DNA of 64,000 bases from Macrostomum lignano (Eukaryota): NCBI GenBank assembly GCA_002269645.1, contig NIVC01000232.1:133684-197683 (forward strand). Reading direction: 5' to 3'. The notes under the pieces are model-generated. The model worked only from the letters and a program-made list of their open reading frames with translations, had not been told where the DNA came from and made no database searches. The position numbers were made by a program, and so were the translations under genes. Shown piece after piece: positions 10,401 to 47,493 of this stretch. Positions within the stretch are counted from its first letter, which is position 1; every line of letters begins with the position of its first letter.

Positions 10401-10407
10401 ATCTTAA
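4455..10407 (+). CDS. ABCA-subfamily full transporter (TMD-NBD-TMD-NBD), highly divergent. Exons ~4455-5990, 6339-9742, 10062-10407, with about 5 frameshifts
   Basis: Splicing gives ALRQVSFKIYPGHITWLLGNSGSGKST (Walker A 1), then LVLLDEP, LPVYFPITKRFW before NBD1, Walker A 2 GPGGSGKS, GYCPQ Q-loop and a C-terminal regulatory-like exon (IYGNWFVLDI). Introns 5991-6338 and 9743-10061 are GT-AG and in phase. Confidence 0.85.
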
Positions 10408-10894
10408 AACTGTATGCAAGATTTTATGCTGATTGTCTTTAACAAGTGCTACCTTTTTAGTTGCTTCTGGCATAAAAAACTGAAATTCTTCTTTTCTGAG
10501 GTCACAATGAGGTTGCATGTAAATAAAGTTGTGCCAAATTAAATTTTCGGCTTATCTTTCAAGCGAAATTGTCTCTTATTCATTCTACTTGATTCTGCTT
10601 AAATTTCCAACTAATCAAAATAAAACATTAGTCTTCTGTAGCCTCCTTTTAAAAAGGGTTAAGTTTGCTCGTAGAAGAGGATATATTTCAATAGTCTCTA
10701 TATGCAAACAATGGCAATGAACGAACGGTGTTCTTTGAAGAAGGATCTTTTCCACAGTAGCAATAAGAGCTGAGCAAACAGAGCGCGGGAGCTTTTGTCT
10801 TTAGTGTATGTGGTCTCAGGTGGATCGAGTGAAAATGTACAAAAAATCCAGAGTTGATAAAAGAAAATCTCTACTTGGCTGACGGGGCACATAT

Positions 10895-12601
10895 ATGGCT
10901 CTGAGAATCTTAGAGGAAACCAGAGCGGATATCATGGAGCAAGTAAAAAATGCTCTGGAGGCAACATCACTTCATGGCTTGCCCAGAGTAGCGTCAAACA
11001 AGCCGATCTATATCCGCATCCTGTGGCTGCTCCTGTTCCTGTTCATGCTTTCCCTGTTTCTTAAAGGCTTTATTGAGTTCATCAACAAGCTGCAATCTCA
11101 TCAGGTGACCACGTCCTTCGAAGCGAATTCGCTGCCATTCCAGTTTCCCGATGTCTACGCCTGCTACGAGAACGCTCTGTCTGGAAGCTATGCGTCGAAC
11201 GTTGACTCGAAATCGGCTCAGTTAATCAACGACAAGCTGCTCAATGCCAGTAGCGTTTTGAAGTCGTTTTTAATGCAGAGAAACTTATCTAGCACAGAAA
11301 TGTTGGCGAAAGAGCGCGAGTTGAGCTTCTTTTATCCGCAGTCGCTGCCTTTTAAACTACTGGTTGACTCGCTAAGCCACAGAATCGAACAGGGAGTTCT
11401 GAGCAGTGGAATTGTCTTCATGGAGAGCGGCGGCTCTCCGGACTACACTAACGTCCATGCCACGGTGTTCTATCATCCGCTTTACCTCCAGTGCTTCAAG
11501 TGGTCGTTGGATAGAGCTACGCAGAAAAAGTTGGCCAAAAGTGGTTTATCAACTGGACTCGCTGTGACACTTTTAATTGACGGGAACTCCACTGAGGTGA
11601 CTTCTGGAGGCACGAAAATTCTTCCGATGGTTTACACCGTTGGTGAAGAAGCTGCTCTACCTGTTTCGGACTGGACCATGCTGTCGAACGACTTTTTCGG
11701 ACCCGACCGAACTTCCGGCGTTCGAGTGTTCCTGACCCCTCCAGGAGAGTACCCGTCCGACTTTGTGAACTCGTTCTCGCTGAGCCCTGGTATGCATCAC
11801 AAAGTTGAAATTAGCATGACTCAGCAAGAGTACAAGGCGGGTCAGTTCAACTGTCGCGCGGAGACCCCCGCGGTCCAGTTCGTGAACCCATACGACCAGA
11901 CTCCTTACAATCACATCTACAGCTTTTCCTATTGCTACTACTACGAGTACCATAAACAGTTCCAAGCGCTCTTCAATCTATCTGGAGACGTTAGTCCTCT
12001 GCCCTGGCCATTGGTTGGGAAGAAGTATCTGCTTAATGTGACTGGCGAGCCAAACTTTTTAGCAATGAGCCTCGATCCGCTGTCCGACTTTAGCGCTGTT
12101 GAAGATGCTTACGAAGTTGCACAAGATAAATGTGGGTCACAGCGGCCCTGCACTACCCGGGACTACAAGGTGAGCATCTCAAGTTCCGATTGGCCTAGTC
12201 AGAGCTCTCTGATGCCTTTCATCCAAAGCACGGTCAGACAGGCCTGGTTGCGGGCCAAATCCAAAAACCAAAGCGTGCCAGCGCTTGACTTCCTATTGAC
12301 TGGGAACAGTTCTAGTGTGACCAGCTACGTGCGTCAAAACATGCTAAAGGTGAATTTTAAGCCGCGCAGCGCTTTGTCCGACAAAGTGACATTCTCCAAG
12401 GACTACGGTATTTCTAACTTCATCTCGGACGTTGGTGGAATCATGGGCATCTATTTGGGCATGTCGCTGCTCACACTGTGCGAGCTGATAGAGCTTTTCT
12501 ACGACTTGATCACGGCTTGGAACACTCAGAGACGACCGAAGACGGTTGAACCTGACAAAACAATGTGTAAAGAGCCGACTTTCGTGGAAAGCAGTCAGTG
12601 A
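10895..12601 (+). CDS. DEG/ENaC family sodium channel subunit, copy 1 (intronless, 568 aa)
   Basis: N-terminal TSLHGLPR (HG motif), TM1, FPDVYAC, GVRVFL..PPGEYP, DWPS, and TM2 ISDVGGIMGIYLGMSLLTLCEL. Confidence 0.95.
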   Translation: MALRILEETRADIMEQVKNALEATSLHGLPRVASNKPIYIRILWLLLFLFMLSLFLKGFIEFINKLQSHQVTTSFEANSLPFQFPDVYACYENALSGSYASNVDSKSAQLINDKLLNASSVLKSFLMQRNLSSTEMLAKERELSFFYPQSLPFKLLVDSLSHRIEQGVLSSGIVFMESGGSPDYTNVHATVFYHPLYLQCFKWSLDRATQKKLAKSGLSTGLAVTLLIDGNSTEVTSGGTKILPMVYTVGEEAALPVSDWTMLSNDFFGPDRTSGVRVFLTPPGEYPSDFVNSFSLSPGMHHKVEISMTQQEYKAGQFNCRAETPAVQFVNPYDQTPYNHIYSFSYCYYYEYHKQFQALFNLSGDVSPLPWPLVGKKYLLNVTGEPNFLAMSLDPLSDFSAVEDAYEVAQDKCGSQRPCTTRDYKVSISSSDWPSQSSLMPFIQSTVRQAWLRAKSKNQSVPALDFLLTGNSSSVTSYVRQNMLKVNFKPRSALSDKVTFSKDYGISNFISDVGGIMGIYLGMSLLTLCELIELFYDLITAWNTQRRPKTVEPDKTMCKEPTFVESSQ

Positions 12602-13307
12602 ATTACAGGCATGTTCTACTATTTCTCAAGCAAACACTAATTGAAAACAAAAAAATTTGAAATCGGACTGTGAATTTATCTTTCGAATCCGTGGTGTTCC
12701 TTGGTTTTACTATTTGCATTGATAATCTCATAGCTACATTTTCATATTTATGCAGATCATGCAGTCATGACTAAGCTCTTGTGCATAACATTTAATTGAG
12801 TCTATCGAATATTTACCATTGAATACATGTATACGAATTCTATAAATTATCAGACATAAAAAGATTACATACTCGTAGCTAGATACTTGCTTCATTTTCA
12901 GATCAAAATTCTAAAGGAGATAGGGCAAAACAATACAATTTCTATCTCGTTATAGAATTTTGCAGTAAAACAAATCTACAGTTAAAAATTGCTACGTGAT
13001 TAATTACTATACGCTCGTCCGCCTGCTTGCGAAAGCAAGTTGACTTATGAGCGCGTAGATAAAGCCTATGCAAACGGTGTGAGCTCACACAAAACCAATA
13101 TGAGTCTATGATTTGCGCAATGGTTCAGCAATACATGTACATTCCCACTGCAGCAGTCTGTCTAGTTTGATTACTAAGTCTGTCAACTTCCCGATACGCA
13201 ACCAATCGATATCAACCAGCGTATTTGAGTATATAACCAATTAACTGTCCAACACACAAGTTAGCCAGACGCTTTATCCTCCTAGGCTCGCAATATTACC
13301 GAACAAA

Positions 13308-14923
13308 ATGAAGCAGCAAGTAAAGGCGGCCTTAGAATCGACCTCGGCTCACGGTCTACCGAGAACCGTGAGCAGTAAACCGCTGCTCATCCGTCTAATA
13401 TGGGTGGCTTTATTTCTTCTCATGGCCGGCTGCTTTTTGCGAGGATTGTTTCTGTTTTCAATAAAGTTTGCTGCAAATCCGCAAACTAGCACTTTGGAAG
13501 CGAACAAAGTGGTGTTCCAGTTTCCCGATATTTACGCCTGTCACGAGACTCCTTTCTCTGCCAGCTACGCAGTCAATGTGGACAGGATTGCTGCAAATGC
13601 GATTAATTCAATAATGAACTCCACAACGCCATCCATACGGGAATACTTAGCAAAAAATATCTAAACGAGACAGACGAAAGCAAAACCATGCCGCCAAATA
13701 CATTCTTCTATGTATTCTCTCTACCATACTCGCTTATGGTCGACGCGCTGGCCCACAGGGCCGAGCAATCTGTCATCTCAAGTGGTGTCCTGTACAGGGA
13801 AAAACGTGGCACTCCCCACTACGAACATATTGAAGCGACCAGCTTCTTTCACCCGATTTACCTTCGGTGCTTCAAGTGGACCCTGGACAAAGAATTTCAG
13901 ACTGCTGTGTTGAAGTCCGGCTCGTGGGCCGGCATCACTGCAACGCTGCTCATCGACTCGAGCGCATCGGAGATCGAATCCAATGGCGCACCAATTCAGC
14001 GCATGGTGTACTCAAACTACAGCTTGCTCTCAGTCTGGGAGTGGTCTCTTTCGCTGCGCGACTACTTCGAGGCCGACAGGAGCGCCGGAATTCGAGTATT
14101 CCTCGCACCGCAAGGCGAATACCCGTCCGAGTTCGTGAGCTCGTTCGTCCTGGGTCCGGGAAAGCACCACACAGTCGAAATCGAGATGCTGCAGCAGGAG
14201 TACACAGCTGGCCAGTTCTCGTGTCGCGGTGACAGTCCCGCAGTGCAGTTTGTGAATCCGTACGATGACACTCCGTACAATCACACCTACAGCTATTCCT
14301 ACTGCTTCTACAAGTCATATCATGAAATCATTCAAAGATTGTATAATCTCTCGGGCGATATAGGACCTTTGCCATGGCCTCTTCGGGGTAAAAAATATGT
14401 CTTTAACCTGACTGGAGAGCCAAACTTTGCCAGTCTGAAGTTGAACCATTCTGACTATTCGACTATAGAAGACGCCATTGCTAATGTCGAGGAAAACTGC
14501 CAGTTGGATCGGCCGTGCAGCAGCCTTCAGTACCGCTCGAGTGTCTCCAGCGCTGACTGGCCCATAGACAGCTCCATCTTCTCCTTCATCAACAGCACGG
14601 TCAGGGAGGCCTGGACTCAAGCCAACGCCAGGAACCTCAGCGTGCCTGCTCTGGACTTTCTAATGACTGGAAACGATTCGGTTGTGTCATTGTATGTTCG
14701 CAAGAACCTGCTTAAAGTGCACTTTAAACCGTCGCAAACGCTAAGCGATAAAATTGTGTTCTCAAGGGACTATGGACTGGAGAACTTTGTTGCAGAAATT
14801 GGCGGCACTATGGGAATCTACCTGGGCATGTCGCTGCTCACCTTGTGCGAACTATTCGAACTAATTTACAATATTGTCGCTATCTACAAGTCGAAGAAGT
14901 CGCAGCAACAAGTTGAAAACTGA
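13308..14923 (+). CDS. DEG/ENaC subunit, copy 2 (one -1 frameshift in an A-run at ~13655)
   Basis: ORFs 13308-13664 and 13688-14923 join as LAKKYLNETDESKTMPP if one A is added to AAAAAA. All family motifs are present (SAHGLPR, FPDIYAC, AEIGGTMGIYLGMS). Confidence 0.9.
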
Positions 14924-15545
14924 GTAGGGCAATAATGTCACGAGGCAATAAAATACAATATTTGTATTTTCAAGTATTTTCAAAACGAATGTCGTCACTA
15001 TATTGATCATATGCCGGACTTCATCATTCATATTTTAATATTTCACAGGTAAAATTACGTAAGAGTAATTATAAAGACAAAACTTGCTAATCATTAAAAG
15101 TCACTCGTATAGAATTGTATTTCTGTAACATAAGTCAAAGTTTTGTTATTATTTGCCTCCTAACATTAATGGGAAATTTCGTTCGTGTTTTCTACCACTC
15201 ACGAACAGTGGCCAGTGCAATAAAGGTTTATCGCGTCCTTTTCAAGCCATAGTCCTGTGACATACGGCAGTTATGTTGCTAAGCAACGATTAGGCAAACA
15301 ATAGACGCTCCCGACAATAATTGAGAGATCGAGACAATGCTGGGATTAAGTGAAGAGGGAAATTGGCGTTCCTAATTTGGCACCGAGTGGGCATCGGTCG
15401 ATTGATTACTAACTCTAATGAGGCAAATTACTCACATCAGCCTCGCAGAGAGATACGAGTACAAAGCAAGCCAGTTCATCTGCTAATATATTTGAGTCAG
15501 GCATACTCTGAGCAACCTTGTCGCTAAAGACCCAGAACAGAAGGC

Positions 15546-17186
15546 ATGCATCACCTGAGAGCTGCTCTCGAGACCACTACGGCTCACGGCCTGTCGCGCC
15601 TTGTCACCGGCAAGCCCCTGTACGTGAGAGTCGCCTGGCTACTGCTGTTCTGCGTCACCATGGCGCTGTTTCTCCGCGGTTTCGTCGAGTTTGTTGGGAA
15701 GCTTCGATCCAATCCGGCAACAAACTCGCTGGAAGTGAACGGCGCCAGCTTCCAGTTTCCTGACGTGTACGTCTGCTTTGAAAATCCGATCTCGGGCAGC
15801 TATGCCGCTAATCTCCATCCACATTCAGCTGCCGAAATTAACAACCGAATCAATCGGACCTTTGATATACTGTCAGCATACAGCTTTGGATACGGTAACC
15901 AAGATTTGTTCATTAGAGGCTTTTCGTTTGTTCAGCCTCACTCTTTACCGTATCAACTGCTGGTGGATACTTTAGGAAAAAGGCATGAGCAGAGCATTTT
16001 AGTCGGCGGCATAGTTTACAAAGACTCGGCTGGAATGCCGCACTACCGTAAGTTGAATAGCAGTATATTCTATCACCCGATCCACCTGGGATGCGCCAAA
16101 TTCGTACTCAGTGGCGCCGAAGCCGAGCTTTTAGGAAGAAGCGGAGCCAATTCCGGACTGCTACTCAAAGTTCTACTCGATGAAAACTCCTCATATATAC
16201 CGGCGAACGGAGCGCCCATCAGAGACGCAGTGTATACGATGGAGTCTGCAATACCGGTCTCCGACTGGAGCCTCTCGTCCGGCGATCTCTTAGCCCCGGA
16301 CCGAGCATCGGGACTTCGAATCTACTTGGCACCTCCCGGCGAGTACCCGACCGACTTTGTGACCTCATTTTCACTCGGCCCGGGAAAGTATCACACCGTG
16401 GAGATTGACATGAAGCAGCAGGAGTACAAGGCTGGCCAGTTCGACTGCCTGAGCCCGATGCCGGATGTGCAGTTCTTGAATCCGTACCACCGGACGCCGT
16501 ACAATCATTCTTACAGCTACTCATACTGTTTCTACTATGAGTACCAAAGTCTCTACCAGAGAGCGCTGAACATGTCCGGGGATAAGACCCCGATGCCTTG
16601 GGAACTGAGACACAAAGATTACATGTTCAATGTCACTTCAACGCCGAATGTTCTTGATATTTACCCGAACTCAGAGTTAATGAATAATATTGACGATGTT
16701 CAACAGCATGCAACAAAAGCTTGCGAGTCCAAGCGACCCTGTAGCACTATTGAATACAGCGTGAGAATATCCAGCTCCGACTGGCCAACACAAGGATCGC
16801 TCACTGGATTCGTCAACAGCACAGTAGGAGCCGTGTGGCTCCAAGCAAAGATGTTTCACCTGGACGTGCCAGTGCTTGACTTTTTATTCAACGGTAGTGA
16901 CGTTGACGTGCTCACTTACCTGAGAAAGAATCTTCTTAAAGTGTTTTTCAAGCCGAAGAGTCTGCAATGCGACAAGGTCAGCTTTTCTAGAGACTACGGA
17001 GTGTCAAACTTCATATCGGACGTTGGCGGAATCATGGGCATCTACTTGGGAATGTCGATTCTGACTCTGTGCGAGGTTTTCGAACTAATCTACGATCTGA
17101 TTAGCTATTGCAACTCACAGCGCAAAGCAAAGAGTTCCACTTCGGTGGCAGCTTCGTCCGAGATGTCAGTCAAAACACTGCATTGA
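15546..17186 (+). CDS. DEG/ENaC subunit, copy 3 (546 aa, intact)
   Basis: TAHGLSR, FPDVYVCFEN, GLRIYLAPPGEYP, SDVGGIMGIYLGMS. Confidence 0.95.
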   Translation: MHHLRAALETTTAHGLSRLVTGKPLYVRVAWLLLFCVTMALFLRGFVEFVGKLRSNPATNSLEVNGASFQFPDVYVCFENPISGSYAANLHPHSAAEINNRINRTFDILSAYSFGYGNQDLFIRGFSFVQPHSLPYQLLVDTLGKRHEQSILVGGIVYKDSAGMPHYRKLNSSIFYHPIHLGCAKFVLSGAEAELLGRSGANSGLLLKVLLDENSSYIPANGAPIRDAVYTMESAIPVSDWSLSSGDLLAPDRASGLRIYLAPPGEYPTDFVTSFSLGPGKYHTVEIDMKQQEYKAGQFDCLSPMPDVQFLNPYHRTPYNHSYSYSYCFYYEYQSLYQRALNMSGDKTPMPWELRHKDYMFNVTSTPNVLDIYPNSELMNNIDDVQQHATKACESKRPCSTIEYSVRISSSDWPTQGSLTGFVNSTVGAVWLQAKMFHLDVPVLDFLFNGSDVDVLTYLRKNLLKVFFKPKSLQCDKVSFSRDYGVSNFISDVGGIMGIYLGMSILTLCEVFELIYDLISYCNSQRKAKSSTSVAASSEMSVKTLH

Positions 17187-20454: not shown

Positions 20455-22116
20455 ATGAAGCAGCTGTTTCGATCAGCGCTGGAGTCCAGCAGCGCTCATG
20501 GACTGCCGAGAACCGTCAGCAGCGAGAAACCACTGTTTGTCAGGCTGATCTGGTTGGCTCTGTTCTCCTTCATGCTTGTCTTGTTTTTAAACAGCCTAGT
20601 TCGATTCACTGAGAAACTCATCGCGAATCCGCAAACCAGCTCGATTGAGGCGAACTCCGTCACCTTCCAGTTTCCGGATATTTACGCCTGCCATGAAACT
20701 CCCGTGTCGGCCAGCTACGCGGTAAATGTAGACAAGAAGATGGCACTGGAGATCAACTCTCTATTAAGTAATACAACAAGGAAAATTCGACAATTTTTTA
20801 CAACTAGAAATCAGTCTGGTAGGGACGAAAACATTCGGCCGGTTACATTCGTTTACGTGCATTCGCTTCCCTACTCGCTTCTGGTTGACGCGCTGGCCCA
20901 CAGGGCCGAGCAATCTGTCATCTCAAGTGGCGTCCTGTATAGAGGAAAACGCAGCACTCCCCAGTACAAACATATTGAAGCGACCAGCTTCTTTCATCCC
21001 ACGTACCTTCGGTGCTCGAAGTGGACCCTGGACAAAGACTGGCAGAAAACCGTGTTGAAGTCCGGCTCGTGGGCCGGCATCACTGCAACGCTGCTCATCG
21101 ACTCGAGCGCATCGGAGATCGAATCCAATGGCGCGCCAATTCAGCGCATGGTGTACTCAAACTACAGCTTGCTCTCAGTCTGGGAGTGGTCTCTATCAAT
21201 GCGTGACATCTTTGAGCCAGACAGGAGCGCCGGAATTCGAGTATTCCTCGCACCGCAAGGCGAATACCCGTCCGAGTTCGTGAGCTCGTTCGTCCTGGGT
21301 CCGGGAAAGCACCACACAGTCGAAATCGAGATGCTGCAGCAGGAGTACACAGCTGGCCAGTTCTCGTGTCGCGGTGACAGTCCCGCCGTGCAGTTTGTGA
21401 ATCCGTACGATGACACTCCGTACAATCACACCTACAGCTATTCCTACTGCTACTACGCGTTGTATAACAAAGGTCTTCAAGAAACGCTTAACATGTCCGG
21501 AGGGATCGGTCCTCTGCCGTGGCCTTTGAGAGGGAAGAACCATGCATTCAATTTTACCGGCGAGCCCAGCCTGGCAGACACGTCCGCGGCTGAGGTGAAT
21601 CCCGACTTTTTTACTGAACTGCTTGACAATATCGATAAATACTGTCAGCTGCAACGTCCGTGCACCAGCCAGCAGTACAAGGCGAGCATCACCAGTGCCA
21701 AATGGCCAACTCAAAGCTCGCTTGCTTCCTTCATCAACAGCTCGGTGAAGCAGACCTGGACTCAAGCCAAGGCCAGGAACCTCAGTGTACCTGCGCTAGA
21801 CTTTCTGATGACAGGAAACGCATCCAGTGTCGCTTCGTTTATTCAAGAGAATGTTTTGAAAGTGCAGTTTAAGCCGCTTGCTGTACTCTGCAATAAAGTG
21901 GTGTTCTCAAGGGAATACGGCTTGGAAAACTTTGTATCGGATATCGGAGGCGTCATGGGAATTTACCTGGGCATGTCACTACTAACTCTTTGCGAACTGC
22001 TTGAGCTGCTGTACGACACTCTTGCTTGGTGCACTTCAAAGAGTAGACATTCCGCGAATGCAGTTGGGAGTCATGTCGCCTCCTCGAAAGCTACGTCTGT
22101 TGTAGAGATAAGCTGA
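20455..22116 (+). CDS. DEG/ENaC subunit, copy 4 (553 aa, intact; closest to copy 2)
   Basis: SAHGLPR, FPDIYACHE, SDIGGVMGIYLGMS. Near-identical central block shared with copy 2. Confidence 0.95.
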   Translation: MKQLFRSALESSSAHGLPRTVSSEKPLFVRLIWLALFSFMLVLFLNSLVRFTEKLIANPQTSSIEANSVTFQFPDIYACHETPVSASYAVNVDKKMALEINSLLSNTTRKIRQFFTTRNQSGRDENIRPVTFVYVHSLPYSLLVDALAHRAEQSVISSGVLYRGKRSTPQYKHIEATSFFHPTYLRCSKWTLDKDWQKTVLKSGSWAGITATLLIDSSASEIESNGAPIQRMVYSNYSLLSVWEWSLSMRDIFEPDRSAGIRVFLAPQGEYPSEFVSSFVLGPGKHHTVEIEMLQQEYTAGQFSCRGDSPAVQFVNPYDDTPYNHTYSYSYCYYALYNKGLQETLNMSGGIGPLPWPLRGKNHAFNFTGEPSLADTSAAEVNPDFFTELLDNIDKYCQLQRPCTSQQYKASITSAKWPTQSSLASFINSSVKQTWTQAKARNLSVPALDFLMTGNASSVASFIQENVLKVQFKPLAVLCNKVVFSREYGLENFVSDIGGVMGIYLGMSLLTLCELLELLYDTLAWCTSKSRHSANAVGSHVASSKATSVVEIS

Positions 22117-22949: not shown

Positions 22950-24635
22950 ATGCAGCAAGTGAGAATAGCTGTGAGCTCTACGACTTCGCACGGACTGCCA
23001 AGAGTCGTGTCGAACAAGCCTGTGTATGTGCGGATAGCCTGGCTCCTGCTGTATCTGCTCATGCTCAGCCTGTTTCTCAAGAGCTTCTTTGAATTCGTTC
23101 AAAAGCTACAGTCGCAGAAGGTGACAACCTCAATAGAATCGGGCGTTGAGACTATCCGTTTCCCGGATGTGTGCATTTGCTTTGAAAATCCGATATCGGG
23201 GAGCTACTCCAGCGTCATTGACAACAGCACCGCGGCAACAATTAATGCTACCTTCAGCGTTGTGGACGAAGAAATTAGAAGTTTTGCGATCAGGCATAAC
23301 TATACTGAAAAGAAGCTTCAAGAGCTAAAAGTAGAAAGCAGCTTCTTATATGTGTTCGGTCTGCCCTACACGATTTTATTTGACAGTCTGTCTCATAGAG
23401 TCGAACAGAGCGTCATATCGAGCAGCATCATCTATATTAACGACGTTGGTGAGCCAACTTATGCTCAGATTGACACAAGAGCTTTTAACCATCCGCAGTA
23501 CCTTCGATGTCTACAGTGGACAATCAACAGCACCTGGCAAGAGAAAATGACCACGACCGAGTCGTGGGCTGGACTCACCGTCACCTTGCTGTTGGACACT
23601 GACTCGTCATTCTTCGAGCAGAATGGCTCTCCAATAAAGAAGCGGACATTCATTCCAGATGGCACTGAAGTCCCGATGTCCGATTGGACCTTCTCAATTA
23701 GCGGCTACAGAGAGTCGGACAGACTTGCCGGACTGAAGGTGTTCCTGACTCCGCCTGGCGAGTATCCATCGGACTTCGTGCACTCGTTCTCTCTCGGTCC
23801 GGGTAAATATTATACAGTTGAAATTGGCATGAACCGGCATTGCCTAACTGAAAATCAGTTCGACTGTGTTGGAAGCGGCCATCCAGAAGTCCAGTATGTC
23901 GATCCGTACGATATGTCACCGATCAGCCATGCCTACAGCTATTCCTACTGCTTTTACGAGGCTTACCACCGCTTGACCCAGCAGCTTTTTAATCTGTCCG
24001 GGCATATTGGTCCGCTGCCATGGCCCCTGAGAAGTCGGAAGTATCTGTACAATATCTCTGCCCGACCGCACTTTGCCAGCGTTGACCACGACAGCTCAGT
24101 ATGGCTTGAACAGACAAAACTAACGGAAAAGATCCAACAAGCTTGCAAACAGAAGCGGCCCTGCAGCACACTGGACTATGCTGCCAGCATCTCCAGTACC
24201 AACTGGCCGACCCAGAACTCCCTCTTTTCCTTCATCAACAGCTCAGTAAGGCGGACTTGGACTAGAGCCAAATCCAGGAACCTTAGCGTACCAGCGCTCG
24301 ACTTCCTCATGACCGGAAATGCGTCCAGTGTGGCGTCGTATGTTCGCAACAATTTGCTGAAGGTGCACTTCAAAGCAAAAAGCGTCAGTGGCGACAGGAT
24401 CGTTTTTTCTATCGACTATGGATTCTCGAATTTTGTTTCTGAAGTAGGCGGCGTCATGGGTATCTACTTGGGCATGTCACTATTGACATTATGCGAGCTG
24501 CTGGAGCTGCTGCACGACTTTGTTGCCCGGTTTTGCCGACGGCGCGATGCAGACACATCTCATGGAAGTACTAGTAACGTCGAAGTGTGTAATGTACATG
24601 TACAATCGCCTAATTGTAAAATTTCTCCTCAGTGA
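22950..24635 (+). CDS. DEG/ENaC subunit, copy 5 (561 aa, intact)
   Basis: TSHGLPR, FPDVCICFEN, GLKVFLTPPGEYP, SEVGGVMGIYLGMS. Confidence 0.95.
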   Translation: MQQVRIAVSSTTSHGLPRVVSNKPVYVRIAWLLLYLLMLSLFLKSFFEFVQKLQSQKVTTSIESGVETIRFPDVCICFENPISGSYSSVIDNSTAATINATFSVVDEEIRSFAIRHNYTEKKLQELKVESSFLYVFGLPYTILFDSLSHRVEQSVISSSIIYINDVGEPTYAQIDTRAFNHPQYLRCLQWTINSTWQEKMTTTESWAGLTVTLLLDTDSSFFEQNGSPIKKRTFIPDGTEVPMSDWTFSISGYRESDRLAGLKVFLTPPGEYPSDFVHSFSLGPGKYYTVEIGMNRHCLTENQFDCVGSGHPEVQYVDPYDMSPISHAYSYSYCFYEAYHRLTQQLFNLSGHIGPLPWPLRSRKYLYNISARPHFASVDHDSSVWLEQTKLTEKIQQACKQKRPCSTLDYAASISSTNWPTQNSLFSFINSSVRRTWTRAKSRNLSVPALDFLMTGNASSVASYVRNNLLKVHFKAKSVSGDRIVFSIDYGFSNFVSEVGGVMGIYLGMSLLTLCELLELLHDFVARFCRRRDADTSHGSTSNVEVCNVHVQSPNCKISPQ

Positions 24636-25250: not shown

Positions 25251-26888
25251 ATGCAGAAGTTGCAACTAGCGCTCACTCAGTCCACATCTCACGGACTGCC
25301 TAGAGTGGTCTCAAACAAGCCCGTCTACGTGAGAATAGCCTGGCTGTTACTCTTTCTGCTCATGTTTAGCCTCTTCCTAAAGAGCTTCTTCGACTTTGTC
25401 AACAAACTTAAATCTCAGTTGGTGACGTCTTCTATTGAATCGCGGAGCGAGAAGTTCCAGCTCCCGGATGTGTACGCTTGCTTTGAGAATCCTGTGTCTG
25501 GAAGCTATTCCGGTAACATTGGTGGCAGCACCGCCAGAGCCATCAATGACAGCTTCAATAGTCTAGATGAAGAGCTAAGGAACATTAAAGTTAAACACGG
25601 ATTTACTCAGAAGCAGCTGCAAGCGCTTGTCATGCAAAACAGTTTCGCCTACGTGTTTAGTCTGCCCTACAAACTGCTATTCGACAGTCTGACTCACCGA
25701 GTCGAGCAGAGCGTCATATCTAGCAGTGTCAGCTTCATCAGCGCCAACGGAGAGCTGAGACGAGCTGAATTGGAAGCCAATGAGTTCAACCATCCGCAGT
25801 ACCTTCGCTGTCTGCAGTGGGCCATCAACAGCACCTGGCAGGAGAAAATTATCTCAGACGAGTCGTGGGCCGGACTCACGGTCACTTTGCTTCTAGATAA
25901 CAACTCGTCCTTCGTAAAGTCAGGAGGATACCCGATTCCGCTGAAGGCTTTTCGACAAGACGGCACAGGCGTACCAGTCTCTGACTGGACTATGTCAGAG
26001 AAAGGTTACTCAGAAGCTGACAGAGTGGCAGGGCTGAGGGTGTTTTTGAGTCCAGCTGGAGAGTACCCGTCGGATTTTGTGAACTCATTCGTTTTAAGTC
26101 CAGGAAAATTCCACTTGATCAAGATAGAACAGATTCGGAACGTACTCGCCGAAAATCAGTTCGATTGTGTTAAAAGCCGGCACGAAGTTCAGTTCGCCAA
26201 CCCGTACGATCTCTCAAAGTACAGTCACTCGTACAGCTACTCCTACTGCTACTACTATGAGTACCACAAGCTTTTCCAGCAGTTCTTCAATCTGTCTGGC
26301 GAAATAAGTCCACTTCCGTGGCCTCTAAGAAGTAGGAAGTATCTATACAACTTTTCTAGTTCACCAAATTACATGGATTTGGATCCGTCTGTGTTGATCA
26401 ATCAGGCAACCATTACAGAAAAGGTTCGACAAACCTGTTTGACAAAACAGCCTTGCAGCACACTGGACTACAGCACCAGCATCTCTGGCGCTGACTGGCC
26501 TACTCAGAGCTCCCTTGCTTCCTTCATCAACAGCTCAGTGAGACAGGCCTGGACTCGAGCGAATTCCAGGAACCTCAGTGTACCTGCGCTTGACTTTCTG
26601 ATGAATGGGAAGGCATCCGATGTGGCCGCATATGCTCGAGAAAACCTGTTGAAGGTGCACTTTAAACCTAAGAGCATTAGAAGTGACAAGATAACTTTCT
26701 CCATTGACTACGGTGTTTCTAACTTTGTATCGGATGTTGGCGGCATCATGGGGATCTATTTGGGCATGTCGCTGCTGACTCTTTGCGAACTGCTAGAGCT
26801 GCTGTTCGACCTTGCTGCCTGGAGTTACTCAAAGAGCGATAAATTCAAGTCGGCTTCGGAAGAAACTGATCCTGAGACAGCGACTTGA
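25251..26888 (+). CDS. DEG/ENaC subunit, copy 6 (intact; ATG at 25251)
   Basis: TSHGLPR, LPDVYACFEN, SDVGGIMGIYLGMS. The ORF track starts at an upstream GTG (25218). Confidence 0.95.
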   Translation: MQKLQLALTQSTSHGLPRVVSNKPVYVRIAWLLLFLLMFSLFLKSFFDFVNKLKSQLVTSSIESRSEKFQLPDVYACFENPVSGSYSGNIGGSTARAINDSFNSLDEELRNIKVKHGFTQKQLQALVMQNSFAYVFSLPYKLLFDSLTHRVEQSVISSSVSFISANGELRRAELEANEFNHPQYLRCLQWAINSTWQEKIISDESWAGLTVTLLLDNNSSFVKSGGYPIPLKAFRQDGTGVPVSDWTMSEKGYSEADRVAGLRVFLSPAGEYPSDFVNSFVLSPGKFHLIKIEQIRNVLAENQFDCVKSRHEVQFANPYDLSKYSHSYSYSYCYYYEYHKLFQQFFNLSGEISPLPWPLRSRKYLYNFSSSPNYMDLDPSVLINQATITEKVRQTCLTKQPCSTLDYSTSISGADWPTQSSLASFINSSVRQAWTRANSRNLSVPALDFLMNGKASDVAAYARENLLKVHFKPKSIRSDKITFSIDYGVSNFVSDVGGIMGIYLGMSLLTLCELLELLFDLAAWSYSKSDKFKSASEETDPETAT

Positions 26889-28171
26889 CAGTCTTTGCCT
26901 AATATTTGCTACCATGACGGGTGGCCTTGGTATTGTATAAATAATTTGTTTATTGTGTACGAATCCTTGACTAAAATTTGATGTAAAATGAGCTGGAAGA
27001 GGCCTGCTTTTGACCTCTTTTGTAACTCAGAATGTATGCATTCTGATGCTGATGTCAGCATTCTCGGAGCCTACCGACAGTAGTGACTGTTGTTGCGGTT
27101 TCGATTCGGACATGTTGGACTCTCATCCCAGACCAGTTGTAGCATAAATGAAAAAAGTAGTGCGATGCGGTGGTTTTGTTGTTTGTCGAGTCTTGTGTGA
27201 AATTTGAAAGATTGCGTGAGGATCTTGAAGATTTCGGTGGCATGTGCTGGTTAATAATACATTGTAAATCAGCTCACTGAAATTTTCTGAAGTTTGTGGG
27301 CGTTATAACAAAATACTCCTTTGTTAAAACGAATTAACATACGGTAAGTAATATGAAATGTCAATATGTCATACTAATTAAATGCTGATAAACTAATGAT
27401 GCCGTATTATTTTTGAGGAACTTGCAAAATAATCTCATGACACACATTCTAGGAAAGTTTTTAAATTTAACGTGGTACTTTGGTGAGATTTTTCTTAAAT
27501 TGTACAGTACGGTACGCCACAAAATAAAGTACAGCAAGGTACGAGTAAAGCAATATACTAAAAATAAAAAGAAGATATTACTGTATACTAATAAACGCAA
27601 GCAGACTGACGCTCCTTACCTATTATTTTTGCTTTCTTTTTTCTTCTCTACTAGTAGACAATAGGTCTTAACAGAAGTTTAAAAAGCTCGAAATTTCACA
27701 CCGGTCAAAAGGAAGAATCGTTCATAAGCTAGAGACTTCGCTTGGTCCAAATGTCTTGCTAGTTTCTTCCGTTAACGAAATTAACGAAATTTTGGGCTTG
27801 TAAAAGCAACTCGCCTAAATGAGTATTACATTTGCCATGTGACTTGGGCTCCAGAAACTTGTGTTAGCTAACTAGCAATAATATCAATCAAACAAATTGG
27901 TTTACCAAAATGAAACTCATAGATGGAACTTAAGACGTCAGCACACAGCATCTGTTAGTCTAGATAATACTATACAAATATACTAGACGTTGTTCGCGGA
28001 TGTAATTAATATTTGGCTATAGATACCCTGACTGCAGGCTAATCAAATTCTCGAGAGTACCAAAGCAGACAAGCAGAGCAAACATTGTTGACCCTATAAG
28101 AGAAAACCCTAGGATCAAAATGAGACAGAATATAATATATCGAATTCGTGGAAACAGAGTCTGCCGAAATT

Positions 28172-31100
28172 ATGCAGCAGGTTAAGCTCGCCCTAACTCA
28201 AACGACTGCTCACGGACTGCCAAGAGTTCTCTCAAGCAAGCCAATCTATGTTAGAGTGGCTTGGCTACTTCTGTTCCTGCTCATGTTTGGTTTGTTTCTA
28301 GAGAGCTTCTGCAAGTTTGTCACTAAGCTGAGGTCCCGAAAAGTGACGAGTTCAATCGAATGGGAAGGCGAGAAGTTCCAGTTCCCGGATGTGTACATGT
28401 GCTTTGAGAATCCAGTGTCGGGCAGCTACTCCAGTTTCATGGACAGCGACACTGTGGTGGCAATCAATGATAGCTTTAGCCAATGCGTGGCCCAGCTGAA
28501 GCAGTTTGCGAATAAGCATAATTTCAGCGACGAATACACGGATCAAATAATCGCTAGTAGCAGCTTAATGTTTTTACAAGGTCTACCATACAAGTTGCTA
28601 TTCGACAAGCTGGCTCACAGAGTCGAACAAAGCGTCATTTCAAGCAGCATAATGTATCTACACGAAACTGGACTGCCAACTTCTGTTTCAGTAGAAACCA
28701 AGGCATTCAACCATCCGCTGTATCTTCGCTGCCTAAAGTGGACTATCAACAGTACACTGCAAGATAAAGTGACCGCGTCCGAGTACTGGGCGGGACTCAC
28801 TGTTACTCTGCTATTGGACACAAACTCGTCCTTTGTAAAACCTAGCCGTAGTCATCTTTCTTCGTGGAAAACCGGCTTCCCAGACGGCACAGAGATCCCA
28901 GTGTCCGACTGGCTGCTGTCAGTGAACGGCTTTGCAGAACCGGACAGATTGGCTGCAGTGAAGCTTTTTCTAAGCCCACCTGGCGACTATCCGTCTGAAT
29001 TTGTGAGCTCCTTCTCGCTGAGTCCTGGGAAATATCACACCGTCGAAATTGAAATGGTTAGAAAGGGGATGTCAACTTAAGCACCAGAATGGAGCCCGAA
29101 GTTCAGCTCCGGCCCAAACCGACTGCAATCGATAACTTGTCGGCCCAGACGACTAGAATCGCCGAGACATCCCATCCGGCTCCCTTCCTTGGGGTCCCAG
29201 GGGATAAAGGGGATAAAATGGGGATCTCATGTCAACTTAAGGCTCTGGAATGGAGCCCGAAGTTCAGCTCCGGACCAAACCGACTGCAATCGATAACTTG
29301 TCGGCCCAGACGACTAGAATCGCCGAGACATCCCATCCGGCTCCCTTCCTTGGGGTCCCAGGGGATAAAGGGGATAAAATGGGGATCTCATGTCAACTTA
29401 AGGCTCTGGAATGGAGCCCGAAGTTCAGCTCCGGCCCAAACCGACTGCAATCGATAACTTGTCGGCCCAGACGACTAGAATCGCCGAGACATCCCATCCG
29501 GCTCCCTTCCTTGGGGTCCCAGGGGATAAAGGGGATAAAATGGGGATCTCATGTCAACTTAAGGCTCTGGAATGGAGCCCGAAGTTCAGCTCCGGCCCAA
29601 ACCGACTGCAATCGATAACTTGTCGGCCCAGACGACTAGAATCGCCGAGACATCCCATCCGGCTCCCTTCCTTGGGCTGACTGAAACTCCTCTCGCTGGC
29701 CCCTAAACTGTTGCTCAGTAGGCTTTCGCTGCTGTGGTAAAGCGTTTTCTCTAGCATAAAGTCTGGCAACAAGGCTGCGTGGAAGAGCGAAATCAACAAA
29801 GCGAAGGCCGGCACCAGACCTTCGATAGCTACATATGTATCTTGGTGGTAAGCGTAGCAGCCCAGGAGTTTGAGCACTGCCATTACGCTCGTACATGACA
29901 ATCGCAGCCTGCAGTCCTACTTCCTGCTTTTGCTGACGAGTAGAAGCCAGGAAGAAGTTGCAATCCTGGATCTCTAAAACCAAAGCGATTGTCCGCTGCT
30001 GTCACACACTCTAAGAATCACGCGGTAGGATTTTGAATTATGGCGCGAGAAAACGACAGCTAGAAAAATCAAGACGGATGCCACCGACCGAATCGGTTGC
30101 TCCAGTTTTCTAGCGGCGTCGCTTGCCGAAACTTCCAACACTCCCGGCGGCTTGGATGTGTAACTCAAAGTCTCTCCAGGAGTCACCTTCGTAGCTATCG
30201 AGAACCTCCTTGACACGAATGTTTTGAATGTAATAATCGGCTTGATTTAGTTGATACGGATCCACCGAAACCTCTGACAAATTCACTGTGTGAATTCGGG
30301 GGAACCCCGAGCTTTTTGGATCCAGCGGGTTGACAGCAATCCATGCCCTTGTGTTAGCAGGGGGGCACGCTTCAGATCACAGTTGAAGTGCAGCTGCTCA
30401 ATTTCGTCAAGTTCGTTGGACAAGAGCACTCGGCGCATGAAATTCTGCCCGAATTCGAACAACGATAGCCCTGTCCATGACGGTGGAGCTGTTTAAATGA
30501 TTCAAAACCTGGATGCGCCCGGTTGTACTTTGCCATCGAGGTCTCGATAACAACGTCTAATCGGCAGGGCTCACTGAAGCCGGCTGACGGCAGCCACTGA
30601 TACGGTTTGTGCCTCTCGTTAAAACATTTGTCCTGCTTAATGGCAGCAAAGCAGCACATAGCGGAACATAGTGGCACAGCGGATGTCTCGGCGATTCTAG
30701 TCGTCTGGGCCGACAAGTTATCGATTTCAGTCGGTTTGGGCCGGAGCTGAACTTCGGGCTCCATTCCAGAGCCTTAAGTTGACATGAGATCCCCATTTTA
30801 TCCCCTTTATCCCCTGGGACCCCAAGGAAGGGAGCCGGATGGGATGTCTCGGCGATTCTAGTCGTCTGGGCCGACAAGTTATCGATTGCAGTCGGTTTGG
30901 GCCGGAGCTGAACTTCGGGCTCCATTCCAGAGCCTTAAGTTGACATGAGATCCCCATTTTATCCCCTTTATCCCCTGGGACCCCAAGGAAGGGAGCCGGA
31001 TGGGATGTCTCGGCGATTCTAGTCGTCTGGGCCGACAAGTTATCGATTGCAGTCGGTTTGGTCCGGAGCTGAACTTCGGGCTCCATTCCAGAGCCTTAAG

Positions 31101-32222
31101 TTGACATGAGATCCCCATTTTATCCCCTTTATCCCCTGGGACCCCAAGGAAGGGAGCCGGATGGGATGTCTCGGCGATTCTAGTCGTCTGGGCCGACAAG
31201 TTATCGATTGCAGTCGGTTTGGGCCGGAGCTGAACTTCGGGCTCCATTCCAGAGCCTTAAGTTGACATGAGATCCCCATTTTATCCCCTTTATCCCCTGG
31301 GACCCCAAGGAAGGGAGCCGGATGGGATGTCTCGGCGATTCTAGTCGTCTGGGCCGACAAGTTATCGATTGCAGTCGGTTTGGTCCGGAGCTGAACTTCG
31401 GGCTCCATTCTGGTGCTTAAGTTGACATCCCCTTTATTCACAGAGAACCAGTTTGACTGTCTGCCCCAACTGTCCGAAGTTCATTTTACGAATCCTTACG
31501 ACCTGTCTGCGCACAGCCATGCGTACAGTTATTCTTACTGCTACTACTATGAGTACCATCGGCAGTTTCAATCGACTTACAATATCTCTGGCTTAATAAA
31601 CCCTCTACCATGGCAACTAAGGAATCGTAACTATTTGTATAATTGTTCGGCTACGATAAACTATTTGACGATGGATGTCAAAAACGGTTCCCTTTCAGCA
31701 GCGATCCAGAGTGTGTCAGGCAATGTTCGGACTGCATGCAAAGGAAAACGACTTTGCAGCACACTGGACTACAGTGCCAGCATCTCCAGTGCCGACTGGC
31801 CGACTCAAAGCTCTCTGAATTCGTTTATCAGTTTCTCTGTGAGGCAGGCCTGGTCAAGAGCCAAGGCCAGAAACCTTAGCGTACCTGCGCTCGACTTTCT
31901 CATGACTGGCAACGCATCGAGTGTTGCCACCTATGTTCGCGACAACTTGCTTAAAGTTCACATTAAACCAGGTTGCGTTATGTGCAATAAGATCACGTTT
32001 TCTATTGACTATGACTTCTCAAGTTTCGTCTCAGAGGTAGGCGGCATCATGGGGATTTATCTGGGCATGTCGCTGCTGACTCTGTGCGAACTGCTCGAGC
32101 TGCTTCACGACATTATTGTATGGTATTGTAAAAGGGTCGATCGGGTGTCTTCTGAGGAGCGAGATTCTGATGGCAAAACTTCTGCATCATCCGTATCTGT
32201 TGTTGAAATCGACATGGACTGA
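28172..32222 (+). pseudogene. DEG/ENaC copy 7, interrupted by a 2368-bp transposon. Coding halves 28172-29064 and 31433-32222
   Basis: Removing 29065-31432 restores ATG GTT AGA AA|T TTA TTC ACA GAG = MVRNLFTENQFDC, colinear with paralogs (MIRSAFKEDQFDC). Both halves are otherwise stop-free. Confidence 0.92.
29065..31432. mobile_element. Non-autonomous foldback DNA transposon with modular 161-bp-repeat TIRs, inserted at AAA|TTT with no TSD (Spy-like)
   Basis: Termini GGGGATGTCAACTTAAGCACCAGAATGGAGCCC... and its reverse complement. Left arm 29065-29676 (~4 units), right arm 30681-31432 (~5 units), ~1 kb unique core. Flanks AGAAA and TTTATT rejoin in frame. Confidence 0.85.
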
Positions 32223-36690: not shown

Positions 36691-36703
36691 CATATAGTCA
36701 ACC

Positions 36704-47361: not shown

Positions 47362-47493
47362 TGGGAAATATGCTGGTTTTAATTGCAATAACAGTAAAAT
47401 AAATTTTGGTTGAGTTTTTGTAGATTCATTAGCTTGATATTTAATATTTAAGCTCAACAAAGCAAAGCAAAAACATAATAAACTTAATTTTAA

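What the first reader, a model, noticed from the sequence alone, without database searches (positions are those of the whole stretch)
11860..12160. Minimal cysteine-poor thumb shared by all array channels
Copy 1 has only six extracellular Cys: FPDVYAC, YLQCFKW, QFNC, YSFSYC and DKCGSQRPC (two). The same six recur in every full-length copy. Established: ASIC1 has 14 extracellular Cys, with five disulfides in the thumb. Here the usual CxC and following Cys are replaced by a Cys-free LFNLSG-x-PLPWPL segment with N-glycan sequons, leaving probably three disulfides. The thumb couples ligand sensing to gating, so this implies a different gating mechanism.
Basis: partly seen in the sequence, partly recalled or inferred. 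Interest (0 to 1): 0.7.

Follow-up and report, generated by a model that had tools for sequence, protein, structure and literature searches.

The report
Flatworm sodium channels with few disulfides
A tandem cluster of eight sodium-channel genes in the flatworm Macrostomum lignano has lost four of the seven disulfide bridges that are otherwise almost universal in this channel family. The overall fold appears to be kept, so this is an unusual lineage-specific variant and not evidence of a new way of opening the channel.

Summary
Copy 1 (10895-12601, 568 aa, Pfam ASC/PF00858) has six extracellular Cys: C90, C200, C320, C347, C413 and C419. All eight array copies and the paralogue P0001 keep these six. 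They sit in the alignment columns of chicken ASIC1 C94, C195, C291, C309, C360 and C366. The finger pair (C173/C180) and six of the ten thumb Cys are missing.

The window is Macrostomum lignano contig NIVC01000232.1. Among 68 aligned relatives the Cys count falls 14 to 12 to 10 to 8 to 6, on nested branches of a tree. Known ASIC1 disulfide partners are always lost together. The six-Cys state arose twice within the M. lignano clade.

The thumb is not small: 100 residues against 76 in ASIC1. A high-confidence AlphaFold model (pLDDT 91) keeps both thumb helices. The Cys-free NLSG..PLPWPL segment is among the best conserved extracellular stretches and carries two conserved N-glycan sequons. Pore motifs are intact and dN/dS is 0.1-0.3.

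The step from fewer disulfides to a different gating mechanism is not supported. The thumb lever and its two basal disulfides remain; the distal staples are what was lost. I classify this as a new variant of a known kind, of moderate interest. The ligand is unknown.

The parts
10895..12601 (+). Copy 1 of the DEG/ENaC array: intronless ORF of 568 aa
   Evidence: ORF. Pfam PF00858 E=2.3e-45 covering residues 21-534. AlphaFold model pLDDT 91.3. Best fold matches are FaNaC1, FaNaC, ASIC1 and ENaC.
11006..11095 (+). TM1 (residues 38-67), preceded by the HG motif (H27 G28)
   Evidence: Helix 38-67 in the model. H27 and G28 are invariant.
11162..11164 (+). C90, in the column of ASIC1 C94; inferred partner is C200
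   Evidence: Invariant in 68 of 68 sequences.
11492..11494 (+). C200, in the column of ASIC1 C195
11852..12151 (+). Thumb domain (residues 320-419): helices 344-360 and 395-414, only four Cys
   Evidence: The finding's coordinates 11860-12160 fall within this span.
11852..11854 (+). C320, in the column of ASIC1 C291 (thumb base); inferred partner is C419
11933..11935 (+). C347, in the column of ASIC1 C309 (start of alpha4); inferred partner is C413
11969..12019 (+). Conserved Cys-free segment LFNLSGDVSPLPWPLVG (residues 359-375). F360 and L362 occupy the ASIC1 C322 and C324 columns. The N361-L-S sequon lies between them.
   Evidence: Mean identity 0.80 for residues 361-375. Column mapping. Alignment.
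12035..12043 (+). N381-V-T sequon, two residues after L379 (ASIC1 C336 column)
   Evidence: Conserved in all copies and P0001. The same sequon follows the Cys in the 8- and 10-Cys relatives.
12131..12133 (+). C413, in the column of ASIC1 C360 (end of alpha5). S415 occupies the C362 column.
12149..12151 (+). C419, in the column of ASIC1 C366
   Evidence: Invariant in 68 of 68 sequences.
12410..12532 (+). TM2 (residues 506-546), with degenerin-position S511 just upstream. The helix breaks at the G522-M523-S524 selectivity-filter motif.
   Evidence: Helices 506-522 and 525-546 in the model. S511, G522, M523 and S524 are invariant.
13308..14923 (+). Copy 2: same six Cys, reading frame changes near 13650-13688
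15546..17186 (+). Copy 3 (546 aa)
20455..22116 (+). Copy 4 (553 aa)
22950..24635 (+). Copy 5 (561 aa)
25251..26888 (+). Copy 6 (545 aa from the first ATG)
28148..32222 (+). Copy 7, split into 28148-29080 and 31413-32222 by an inserted element (29062-31435)
33996..35684 (+). Copy 8 (562 aa from the aligned ATG; the ORF opens at 33921)

Best explanation
The window holds a tandem array of eight intronless DEG/ENaC channel genes of Macrostomum lignano. They belong to a lineage-restricted subfamily that has lost four of the seven ancestral extracellular disulfides, pair by pair. The losses are the finger pair C173-C180, the distal thumb pairs C322-C344 and C324-C336, and one rung of the basal ladder (C313 and C362), in chicken ASIC1 numbering. 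Three disulfides probably remain: C90-C200, C320-C419 at the thumb base, and C347-C413 linking the two thumb helices.

The thumb fold is kept, with two long helices. The inter-helix loop that used to be stapled is now a strongly conserved Pro/Trp-rich segment carrying two conserved N-glycan sequons. I infer that hydrophobic packing and glycans replace the lost covalent staples.

The proteins most likely still assemble as trimeric sodium channels. I expect them to gate by the usual finger-to-thumb-to-wrist lever, in response to a stimulus that is not yet known.

Shown here: the Cys pattern, its homology to ASIC1 positions, the nested paired losses, family membership, the fold, purifying selection and intact pore motifs. 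Inferred: the actual disulfide pairing, especially the re-paired C347-C413; stabilisation by glycans; channel function; and the gating route.
For: - **Family and fold.** PF00858 match. Profile hits to FaNaC, ENaC and ASIC structures at E 1e-131 to 1e-84. AlphaFold model with pLDDT 91.3 and pTM 0.83, with thumb helices 344-360 and 395-414 and a TM2 break at GMS. Foldseek top hits are FaNaC1 and FaNaC, then ASIC1.
- **Cys mapping.** The 14 canonical Cys columns were identified in the 68-sequence alignment, with window residues at each. ASIC1 numbering was verified on 6ave.
- **Paired loss.** C173/C180 are both present in 47 sequences and both absent in 20. C322/C344 are 57 and 11. C324/C336 are 60 and 8. 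There are no single losses apart from one alignment gap. C313 is lost together with either C362 (22 sequences) or C360 (6).
- **Nested series.** The NJ tree places the 14-Cys sequences outside a 12-Cys grade. Inside that lies a 10-Cys clade (100% bootstrap), sister (89%) to an M. lignano clade (98%). The M. lignano clade contains 8-Cys and 6-Cys members. Window copies plus P0001 form a 100% clade.
- **Constraint.** dN/dS is 0.10-0.30 for pairs whose dS is not saturated. Residues 361-375 have 0.80 mean identity. HG, S511, GMS and E530 are invariant. The sequons at N361 and N381 are in every copy.
- **Source.** The window is 100% identical to M. lignano NIVC01000232.1. The nearest relatives P0001-P0007 are all M. 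lignano.
- **Gating comparison.** In FaNaC1 the ligand binds the finger and the thumb alpha5 helix is a lever coupled to the wrist beta-turn (PMC11026163).
Against: - No functional data exist for any member. Three other M. lignano DEG/ENaCs near the FaNaC branch gave no peptide-evoked current in oocytes (PMC9234716). I could not tell whether those include this subfamily.
- The disulfide pairing was not measured.
- The C347-C413 pair requires a one-rung shift relative to ASIC1, where the pairs are C309-C362 and C313-C360.
- The AlphaFold confidence partly reflects an alignment dominated by canonical 14-Cys homologues. With the shallow seven-sequence alignment the model failed (pLDDT 40.6).
- The residue at the ASIC1 Y71 / FaNaC1 Y59 position is variable here (H, N, Q or R at position 69 by my hand alignment). 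Wrist coupling may therefore differ in detail.
- No gene is on record at copies 1-3 in the public annotation that was retrieved, and I have no expression evidence.
Confidence: 0.65

Rival explanations
1. The Cys-poor thumb is a functional redesign: a more flexible, glycan-covered thumb that senses or transmits a different stimulus, so the channels gate by a mechanism unlike ASIC or FaNaC.
For: - The thumb loop sequence is strongly conserved within the subfamily (0.80 identity), which suggests a specific role and not mere tolerance of loss.
- The N361 sequon is new in this clade and sits exactly between the lost C322 and C324 positions.
- The ten thumb Cys are more than 90% conserved even across all 31 Drosophila ppk genes (PMC3583452), so their loss is a real departure.
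- The wrist residue at position 69 is not the conserved aromatic of ASIC or FaNaC (hand alignment).
Against: - Both thumb helices and the two basal disulfides are kept.
- The loss is gradual across relatives (14-12-10-8-6) and occurred twice. That pattern looks like tolerated erosion of redundant staples.
- Losing disulfides says nothing by itself about the stimulus or the coupling path.
- No functional data exist.
Confidence: 0.15
2. The subunits are not independent channels. They are obligate heteromeric or modulatory partners. The eight diverged paralogues would combine with each other or with canonical 14-Cys subunits, and the thumb changes would tune assembly or modulation.
For: - Eight paralogues at about 45-73% identity lie side by side.
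- DEG/ENaC heteromers are common, for example ENaC alpha-beta-gamma and the PPK1/PPK26 complex in PDB 9pzn.
- M. lignano DEG/ENaCs expressed alone or in a few combinations gave no current (PMC9234716).
Against: All copies keep the full set of pore and gate motifs: HG, S511, GMS and E530. Nothing in the sequence marks them as non-conducting. This reading is compatible with the best explanation and is not exclusive of it.
Confidence: 0.15
3. The array is decaying. Cys loss would reflect relaxed selection on pseudogenes or annotation artefacts, with missing exons holding the other Cys.
For: - Copy 2 has a frame change and copy 7 is interrupted by a 2.4-kb element.
- A fragment lies at 18148-18417.
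- No gene is on record over copies 1-3 in the retrieved annotation.
Against: - Six copies are intact ORFs of 545-568 aa, despite synonymous divergence at or near saturation.
- dN/dS is 0.1-0.3.
- The six Cys and the pore motifs are invariant.
- The ORF covers the whole fold from TM1 to TM2 at pLDDT 91, which leaves no room for missing exons.
- Unlinked paralogues P0001, P0002, P0005 and P0006 share the four-Cys thumb.
Confidence: 0.05

Closest known systems
FMRFamide-gated sodium channels (Malacoceros FaNaC1, PDB 8on7-8ona; Aplysia FaNaC, 7yvb/7yvc)
   Same: Best sequence and fold matches among solved structures. Same two-TM plus palm, finger, thumb and knuckle subunit. A GxS filter (GIS against GMS here). 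The S-x-S-x-WP motif after the thumb. Both are spiralian.
   Different: Only 16-19% identity. FaNaCs keep the full CxxxC, CxC and CxCxxxC thumb set. Peptide gating has not been shown here. The M. lignano genes near the FaNaC branch that were tested did not respond to peptides (PMC9234716).
Acid-sensing ion channel 1 (chicken ASIC1, PDB 2qts/6ave)
   Same: Same fold. The six retained Cys lie in the ASIC1 C94, C195, C291, C309, C360 and C366 columns.
   Different: ASIC1 has 14 extracellular Cys and five thumb disulfides (PMC13134594). By hand alignment the proton-sensor H73 position is Val here and the Y71 position is variable. ASICs are reported absent from the platyhelminths examined (PMC9949801).
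Drosophila pickpocket (ppk) family
   Same: Large, lineage-specific, partly tandem expansions of DEG/ENaC genes with diverse sensory roles.
   Different: All 31 ppk proteins keep the ten thumb Cys at more than 90% conservation (PMC3583452). The window family keeps four.
Other M. lignano DEG/ENaC paralogues and unnamed environmental relatives (P0003/P0004/P0007 with 8 Cys; P0008-P0019 with 10 Cys; P0021/P0056/P0085 with 12 Cys)
   Same: Same clade (98% bootstrap for all sequences with 12 or fewer Cys). They share the loss of C313 plus one of C360/C362. From the 10-Cys level down they also share loss of the finger pair. The P-x-P/W loop motif and the N-x-S/T sequon after the C336 position are shared.
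   Different: They retain one or both distal thumb disulfides. None has been characterised.

Membership tests
DEG/ENaC superfamily (Pfam ASC, PF00858) | Significant match to the family profile over the full length | tested here: met
   E=2.3e-45, 156 bits against a cutoff of 23.6, residues 21-534 on profile positions 2-455.
DEG/ENaC superfamily (Pfam ASC, PF00858) | Two transmembrane helices flanking a large extracellular domain with palm, finger, thumb, knuckle and beta-ball fold | tested here: met
   AlphaFold model pLDDT 91.3. Foldseek E=5.8e-22 to FaNaC1, with 83 PDB matches at E<=1e-3; all 50 listed are DEG/ENaC chains.
DEG/ENaC superfamily (Pfam ASC, PF00858) | N-terminal HG motif, small residue at the degenerin position, G/S-x-S selectivity filter in TM2 | tested here: met
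   H27-G28, S511 and G522-M523-S524 are invariant in all aligned copies.
DEG/ENaC superfamily (Pfam ASC, PF00858) | Cys-rich extracellular domain: 14 conserved Cys, ten of them in the thumb forming five disulfides | tested here: not met
   Only 6 of the 14 canonical columns hold Cys, and 4 of the 10 in the thumb. This is the feature in which the subfamily departs from the family norm. The other defining features are met, so it remains a member.
DEG/ENaC superfamily (Pfam ASC, PF00858) | Trimeric assembly; amiloride-sensitive, Na+-selective current | not testable with these tools
   No multimer prediction was available and there is no electrophysiology.
FaNaC / peptide-gated branch | Activation by FMRFamide-type peptides through a pocket formed by finger helices alpha1-alpha3 | not testable with these tools
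   The finger region is the least conserved part of the window alignment (0.36-0.50 identity) and diverges even within FaNaCs (PMC11026163). Three M. lignano genes near FaNaC were unresponsive (PMC9234716). It is unknown whether they belong to this subfamily.
ASIC (proton-gated) branch | Conserved H73 and K211 and the Y71-W287 aromatic pair (PMC9949801; 10.1101/2022.06.28.497943) | tested here: not met
   By hand alignment, the H73 position is V71 and the Y71 position is H, N, Q or R at residue 69. The W287 region holds an invariant Q317-F318. K211 was not examined.

The most novel reading that the evidence does not exclude
These channels would be a natural minimal-disulfide DEG/ENaC. They would show that only three disulfides (equivalents of C94-C195, C291-C366 and C309-C360/362) are indispensable for the fold. 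The glycosylated Pro/Trp-rich loop that replaces the distal thumb staples would form a new, more mobile sensing or interaction surface. That surface would give the subfamily a stimulus or coupling mode not seen in ASIC, ENaC or FaNaC, for example insensitivity to redox or a mechanical or thermal modality.
Probability: 0.15. Interest if true: 0.6.

Novelty: new variant of a known kind. Interest (0 to 1): 0.35.

Why it matters
The ten-Cys thumb is treated as a hallmark of DEG/ENaC channels. It is more than 90% conserved across all Drosophila ppk genes. Cys make up 11 of the 33 extracellular residues that are identical between placozoan, nematode and vertebrate channels (PMC3583452, PMC6827283).

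A natural series running 14-12-10-8-6 Cys within one clade gives three things:
- It shows which disulfides are dispensable and in what order. Partners are always lost together.
- It points to a three-disulfide core.
- It provides ready-made scaffolds for testing what the thumb staples contribute to folding, redox sensitivity, toxin or ligand binding, and gating.

It also flags an unannotated eight-gene channel cluster in a laboratory model flatworm where RNAi and in situ hybridisation are routine. The scope is modest. This is a structural variant of a well-known family with no function assigned yet.

Tried and rejected
- **Word-indexed protein search.** Run with copy 1 and then with the seven-sequence alignment, it returned only P0001 both times. 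Relatives came from the exhaustive representative search instead.
- **First AlphaFold run.** The seven-sequence alignment gave an unusable model (pLDDT 40.6). It was replaced by the 68-sequence run.
- **First NJ tree.** produced a comb in input order because saturated Kimura distances became NaN. I discarded it and recomputed with Poisson distances and shuffled input order.
- **First dN/dS script.** It timed out on mafft and was redone with a pairwise aligner. Most pairs are saturated at synonymous sites, so only the closer pairs are informative.
- **Missing exons or an intron in copy 2.** There is no GT..AG across the frame change at about 13650-13688. The change sits next to an A6 run, so it is a 1-nt indel. 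That could be a real frameshift or an assembly homopolymer error.
- **Literature.** I looked for a described DEG/ENaC with a reduced thumb and found none. The centipede PDPNaC1 lacks the knuckle, not the thumb (PMC12714832). Its Cys content and that of BRTNaC1 could not be checked, because only TM2 aligned.
- **Gene identifiers.** I could not map the M. lignano gene IDs tested by Dandamudi et al. (Mlig049925.g2, Mlig051885.g1, Mlig041003.g1) onto the NCBI BOX15 identifiers of P0001-P0007.
- **Cys-Cys distances.** Model coordinates are not exposed, so these could not be measured.
Full report
**What is at the coordinates.** The finding (11860-12160) lies inside a single uninterrupted ORF, 10895-12601 on the + strand, encoding 568 aa. 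The protein matches Pfam ASC (PF00858, amiloride-sensitive sodium channel) at E=2.3e-45 over residues 21-534. The flagged interval encodes residues about 323-422. This is the thumb domain between the first and last thumb cysteines.

**The array.** A tblastn search of copy 1 against the window finds eight copies on the + strand:
- 10895-12601
- 13308-14923, with a frame change
- 15546-17186
- 20455-22116
- 22950-24635
- 25251-26888
- 28148-29080 plus 31413-32222, interrupted
- 33996-35684

There is also an N-terminal fragment at 18148-18417. Pairwise protein identity among the copies is 41-73%.

**Source organism.** The upstream ABC-transporter ORF is 100% identical to a Macrostomum lignano protein. 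The contig fetched for it, GCA_002269645.1 NIVC01000232.1, is 100% identical to window 1-20407. The window is therefore M. lignano, a free-living flatworm. In that record no gene is on record across window 10408-20407, which holds copies 1-3.

**Checking the observation.**
- Copy 1 has eight Cys. Six lie between TM1 and TM2: C90, C200, C320, C347, C413 and C419. C529 is in TM2 and C557 is in the C-terminal tail.
- In the alignment of six intact copies plus the unlinked paralogue P0001, these six are invariant. They are also present in the two broken copies.
- Copies 1, 2 and 6 have exactly six extracellular Cys. The others carry one to four additional, non-conserved ones.
- The ASIC1 comparison is correct. 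The profile alignment to chicken ASIC1 (6ave) shows 14 extracellular Cys at 94, 173, 180, 195, 291, 309, 313, 322, 324, 336, 344, 360, 362 and 366. Five thumb disulfides are stated in PMC13134594.
The thumb is Cys-poor but not small: 100 residues from C320 to C419, against 76 from C291 to C366 in chicken ASIC1.

**Which cysteines are kept.** An exhaustive profile search of 1.84 billion representatives gave 2208 hits. I aligned 62 full-length hits with the window copies (A2). Fourteen columns carry Cys in at least 57% of sequences, and these are the 14 ASIC1 positions. The window proteins keep Cys only in the C94, C195, C291, C309, C360 and C366 columns. The other eight columns hold S171, Y184, E351, F360, L362, L379, D398 and S415 in copy 1.

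The ASIC1 pairing, from my knowledge of Jasti et al. 2007 and the UniProt annotation, is C94-C195, C173-C180, C291-C366, C309-C362, C313-C360, C322-C344 and C324-C336. On that basis the inferred remaining bonds are C90-C200, C320-C419 and a re-paired C347-C413.

**A graded, paired loss.** Across the 68 sequences the presence and absence patterns follow the ASIC1 partners exactly:
- C173/C180 are both present in 47 sequences and both absent in 20.
- C322/C344 are both present in 57 and both absent in 11.
- C324/C336 are both present in 60 and both absent in 8.
- There are no unpaired losses apart from one alignment gap.
- C313 disappears together with either C362 (22 sequences) or C360 (6), which always leaves C309 a partner.

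The patterns form a series:
- 14 Cys: 36 sequences, including Lingula and Owenia proteins.
- 12 Cys: this level includes another M. lignano paralogue (P0085).
- 10 Cys: unnamed Logan and ENA contigs (P0008-P0019).
- 8 Cys: M. lignano P0003, P0004 and P0007.
- 6 Cys: the window copies and P0001 (P0005 is a separate 6-Cys case, below).

P0002 and P0006, both M. lignano, also have four-Cys thumbs.

A bootstrapped NJ tree places these groups in nested order. All sequences with 12 or fewer Cys form a clade at 98%. The 10-Cys group (100%) is sister at 89% to an M. lignano clade (98%). Inside the M. lignano clade, window copies plus P0001 form a 100% clade. P0005 (6 Cys, keeping the C362 and not the C360 position) groups at 100% with the 8-Cys P0003 and P0004. 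The six-Cys state was therefore reached twice.

**Is the thumb still a thumb?**
- A shallow alignment gave an unusable model (pLDDT 40.6).
- With the 68-sequence alignment, AlphaFold gives pLDDT 91.3 and pTM 0.83.
- The thumb has helices 344-360 and 395-414, the alpha4 and alpha5 equivalents. Its pLDDT is 92-98, except for residues 391-400 at 74.
- TM2 is broken at G522-M523-S524, as in solved family members.
- Foldseek's best matches are Malacoceros FaNaC1 (E=5.8e-22) and Aplysia FaNaC, then ASIC1, ASIC5 and ENaC.
- Caveat: the high confidence draws on many canonical homologues, and I could not read coordinates to measure Cys-Cys distances.

**What replaced the staples.**
- The former CxC region is now F360-N361-L362-S363. 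The Asn between the two lost Cys positions has become an N-x-S sequon.
- The sequon N381-V-T sits two residues after the lost C336 position. The same sequon already follows that Cys in the 8- and 10-Cys relatives.
- Both sequons are present in every window copy and in P0001.
- The segment NLSGDVSPLPWPLVG (residues 361-375) has 0.80 mean identity. That places it among the best conserved extracellular stretches, while the finger (106-150) is only 0.36-0.50.
- I infer that proline- and tryptophan-rich packing plus glycans substitute for the lost disulfides. This is inference and was not tested.

**Are the genes functional?**
- Six copies are intact, even though synonymous divergence is at or near saturation.
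- Where dS can be estimated, dN/dS is 0.10-0.30. For example, copies 2 and 4 give dS 0.62 and dN/dS 0.30.
- The HG motif (H27-G28), the small degenerin-position residue S511, the GMS filter and E530 are invariant.
- Copy 2 has a frame change beside an A6 run with no splice signals. This is either a real frameshift or an assembly error.
- Copy 7 is interrupted by a 2.4-kb foldback-type element.

**How it most likely works.** In the closest solved relative, FaNaC1, the peptide binds the finger helices alpha1-alpha3. The long thumb helix alpha5 is pulled about 3 A inward and 2 A upward. It acts as a lever that drags the beta-turn at the thumb base and wrist outward to open the pore (PMC11026163). 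A similar thumb-towards-finger movement is described for ASIC1 in the same paper.

The window proteins keep that lever, its anchoring disulfide at the thumb base, and one link between the two helices. What they lost are the distal loop staples and the finger pair. I therefore expect ordinary trimeric Na+ channels gating by the canonical lever. The altered peripheral surface more plausibly changes what binds or modulates the channel than how the pore is opened.

One detail that may differ is wrist coupling. By hand alignment, the residue at the ASIC1 Y71 / FaNaC1 Y59 position is variable (H, N, Q or R). An invariant Q317-F318 sits where ASIC1 has W287.

**Comparison with what is known.** Published work emphasises how conserved these cysteines are:
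- The ten thumb Cys are more than 90% conserved in all 31 Drosophila ppk proteins (PMC3583452).
- Cys account for 11 of the 33 identical extracellular residues in an alignment spanning Trichoplax, C. elegans and vertebrates (PMC6827283).

M. lignano DEG/ENaCs appear in published trees as uncharacterised branches, near TadNaC10 and near FaNaCs (10.1101/2022.06.28.497943; PMC9234716). Three of them gave no peptide responses, and I could not map their identifiers to this subfamily. I found no paper describing a reduced-Cys thumb. ASICs are reported absent from the platyhelminths examined (PMC9949801), and the ASIC proton-sensor H73 is not conserved here.

**Verdict.** The claim of a different gating mechanism does not follow from it. 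This is a new variant of a known kind, restricted so far to M. lignano and possibly a few environmental relatives, and the end point of a gradual, pairwise erosion of disulfides. Interest is moderate. The channels are useful as a natural experiment on which DEG/ENaC disulfides matter, and as an unannotated channel cluster in a tractable model flatworm. No function is assigned.

Noticed in passing
window 29062-31435: Copy 7 of the array is interrupted by a foldback-type element of about 2.37 kb. It has 615-nt perfectly complementary terminal inverted repeats, themselves built from 161-nt tandem subrepeats. No transposase ORF was recognised inside it.
   Followed up: partly
window 13640-13690: Copy 2 changes reading frame beside an A6 run (gcaaaaaata), with no GT..AG. 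One extra A would give a continuous protein that aligns with copy 4. This is either a recent frameshift or a long-read homopolymer assembly error.
   Followed up: partly
window 10408-20407 (= L002 12732-22731): In the public M. lignano record NIVC01000232.1, the retrieved gene list shows nothing across copies 1-3 of the channel array. The window's channel proteins were also not found in the protein collection. The array appears to be unannotated.
   Followed up: partly
window 18148-18417: An isolated N-terminal DEG/ENaC fragment (30% identity to residues 9-95 of copy 1) lies between copies 3 and 4.
   Followed up: no
residue column about 495-497 of copy 1 (nt about 12377-12385) and the equivalent position in other copies: A seventh Cys recurs just before TM2, in the last palm strand, in copies 3, 4, 7 and 8 and in P0001 (SLQCDK, VLCNK, VMCNK, LMCNR, VLCDR). 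Copies 1, 5 and 6 have Ser or Gly there. It has no evident partner, and it sits near the wrist and vestibule.
   Followed up: no
L003 1978-3711 (JGI metagenome 3300040801, contig Ga0450804_1308438): This environmental contig (GC 37%) encodes a relative about 35% identical to copy 1. It has the C94, C195, C291 and C309 equivalents, a Cys-free segment with an NWS sequon where the CxC would be, and broken frames. The alpha5/CxxxxxC part seems truncated. It may be a member outside M. lignano or a pseudogene.
   Followed up: partly
L001 (Logan DRR639838) and P0008-P0019: The 10-Cys sister group comes only from unnamed short Logan and ENA contigs. The one contig fetched (L001) carries an uninterrupted 524-aa ORF. 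The source organism is unknown.
   Followed up: no
window 7431-10407: An ABC-transporter gene lies directly upstream of the array. It is identical to M. lignano BOX15_Mlig034033g2, and its last exon reaches about 10407.
   Followed up: yes
window 36084-37575, 45976-47460 (-), 48391-49590 (-), 40746-41411: Downstream of the array are a GC-rich (0.595) reverse-transcriptase fragment, a caspase-domain ORF, an apparently intact Tc1/mariner-type transposase (HTH plus DDE_3) and an M28 peptidase exon that looks like a glutaminyl cyclase (my reading of the sequence).
   Followed up: no
window 54000-62000: This stretch has strong GC and AT skew (GC skew -0.26, AT skew +0.28 at 54-56 kb). It contains a 200-aa ORF on the - strand (54885-55487) matching pentapeptide repeats at E=8e-25, which is unusual in an animal genome and may be a translated simple repeat.
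   Followed up: no
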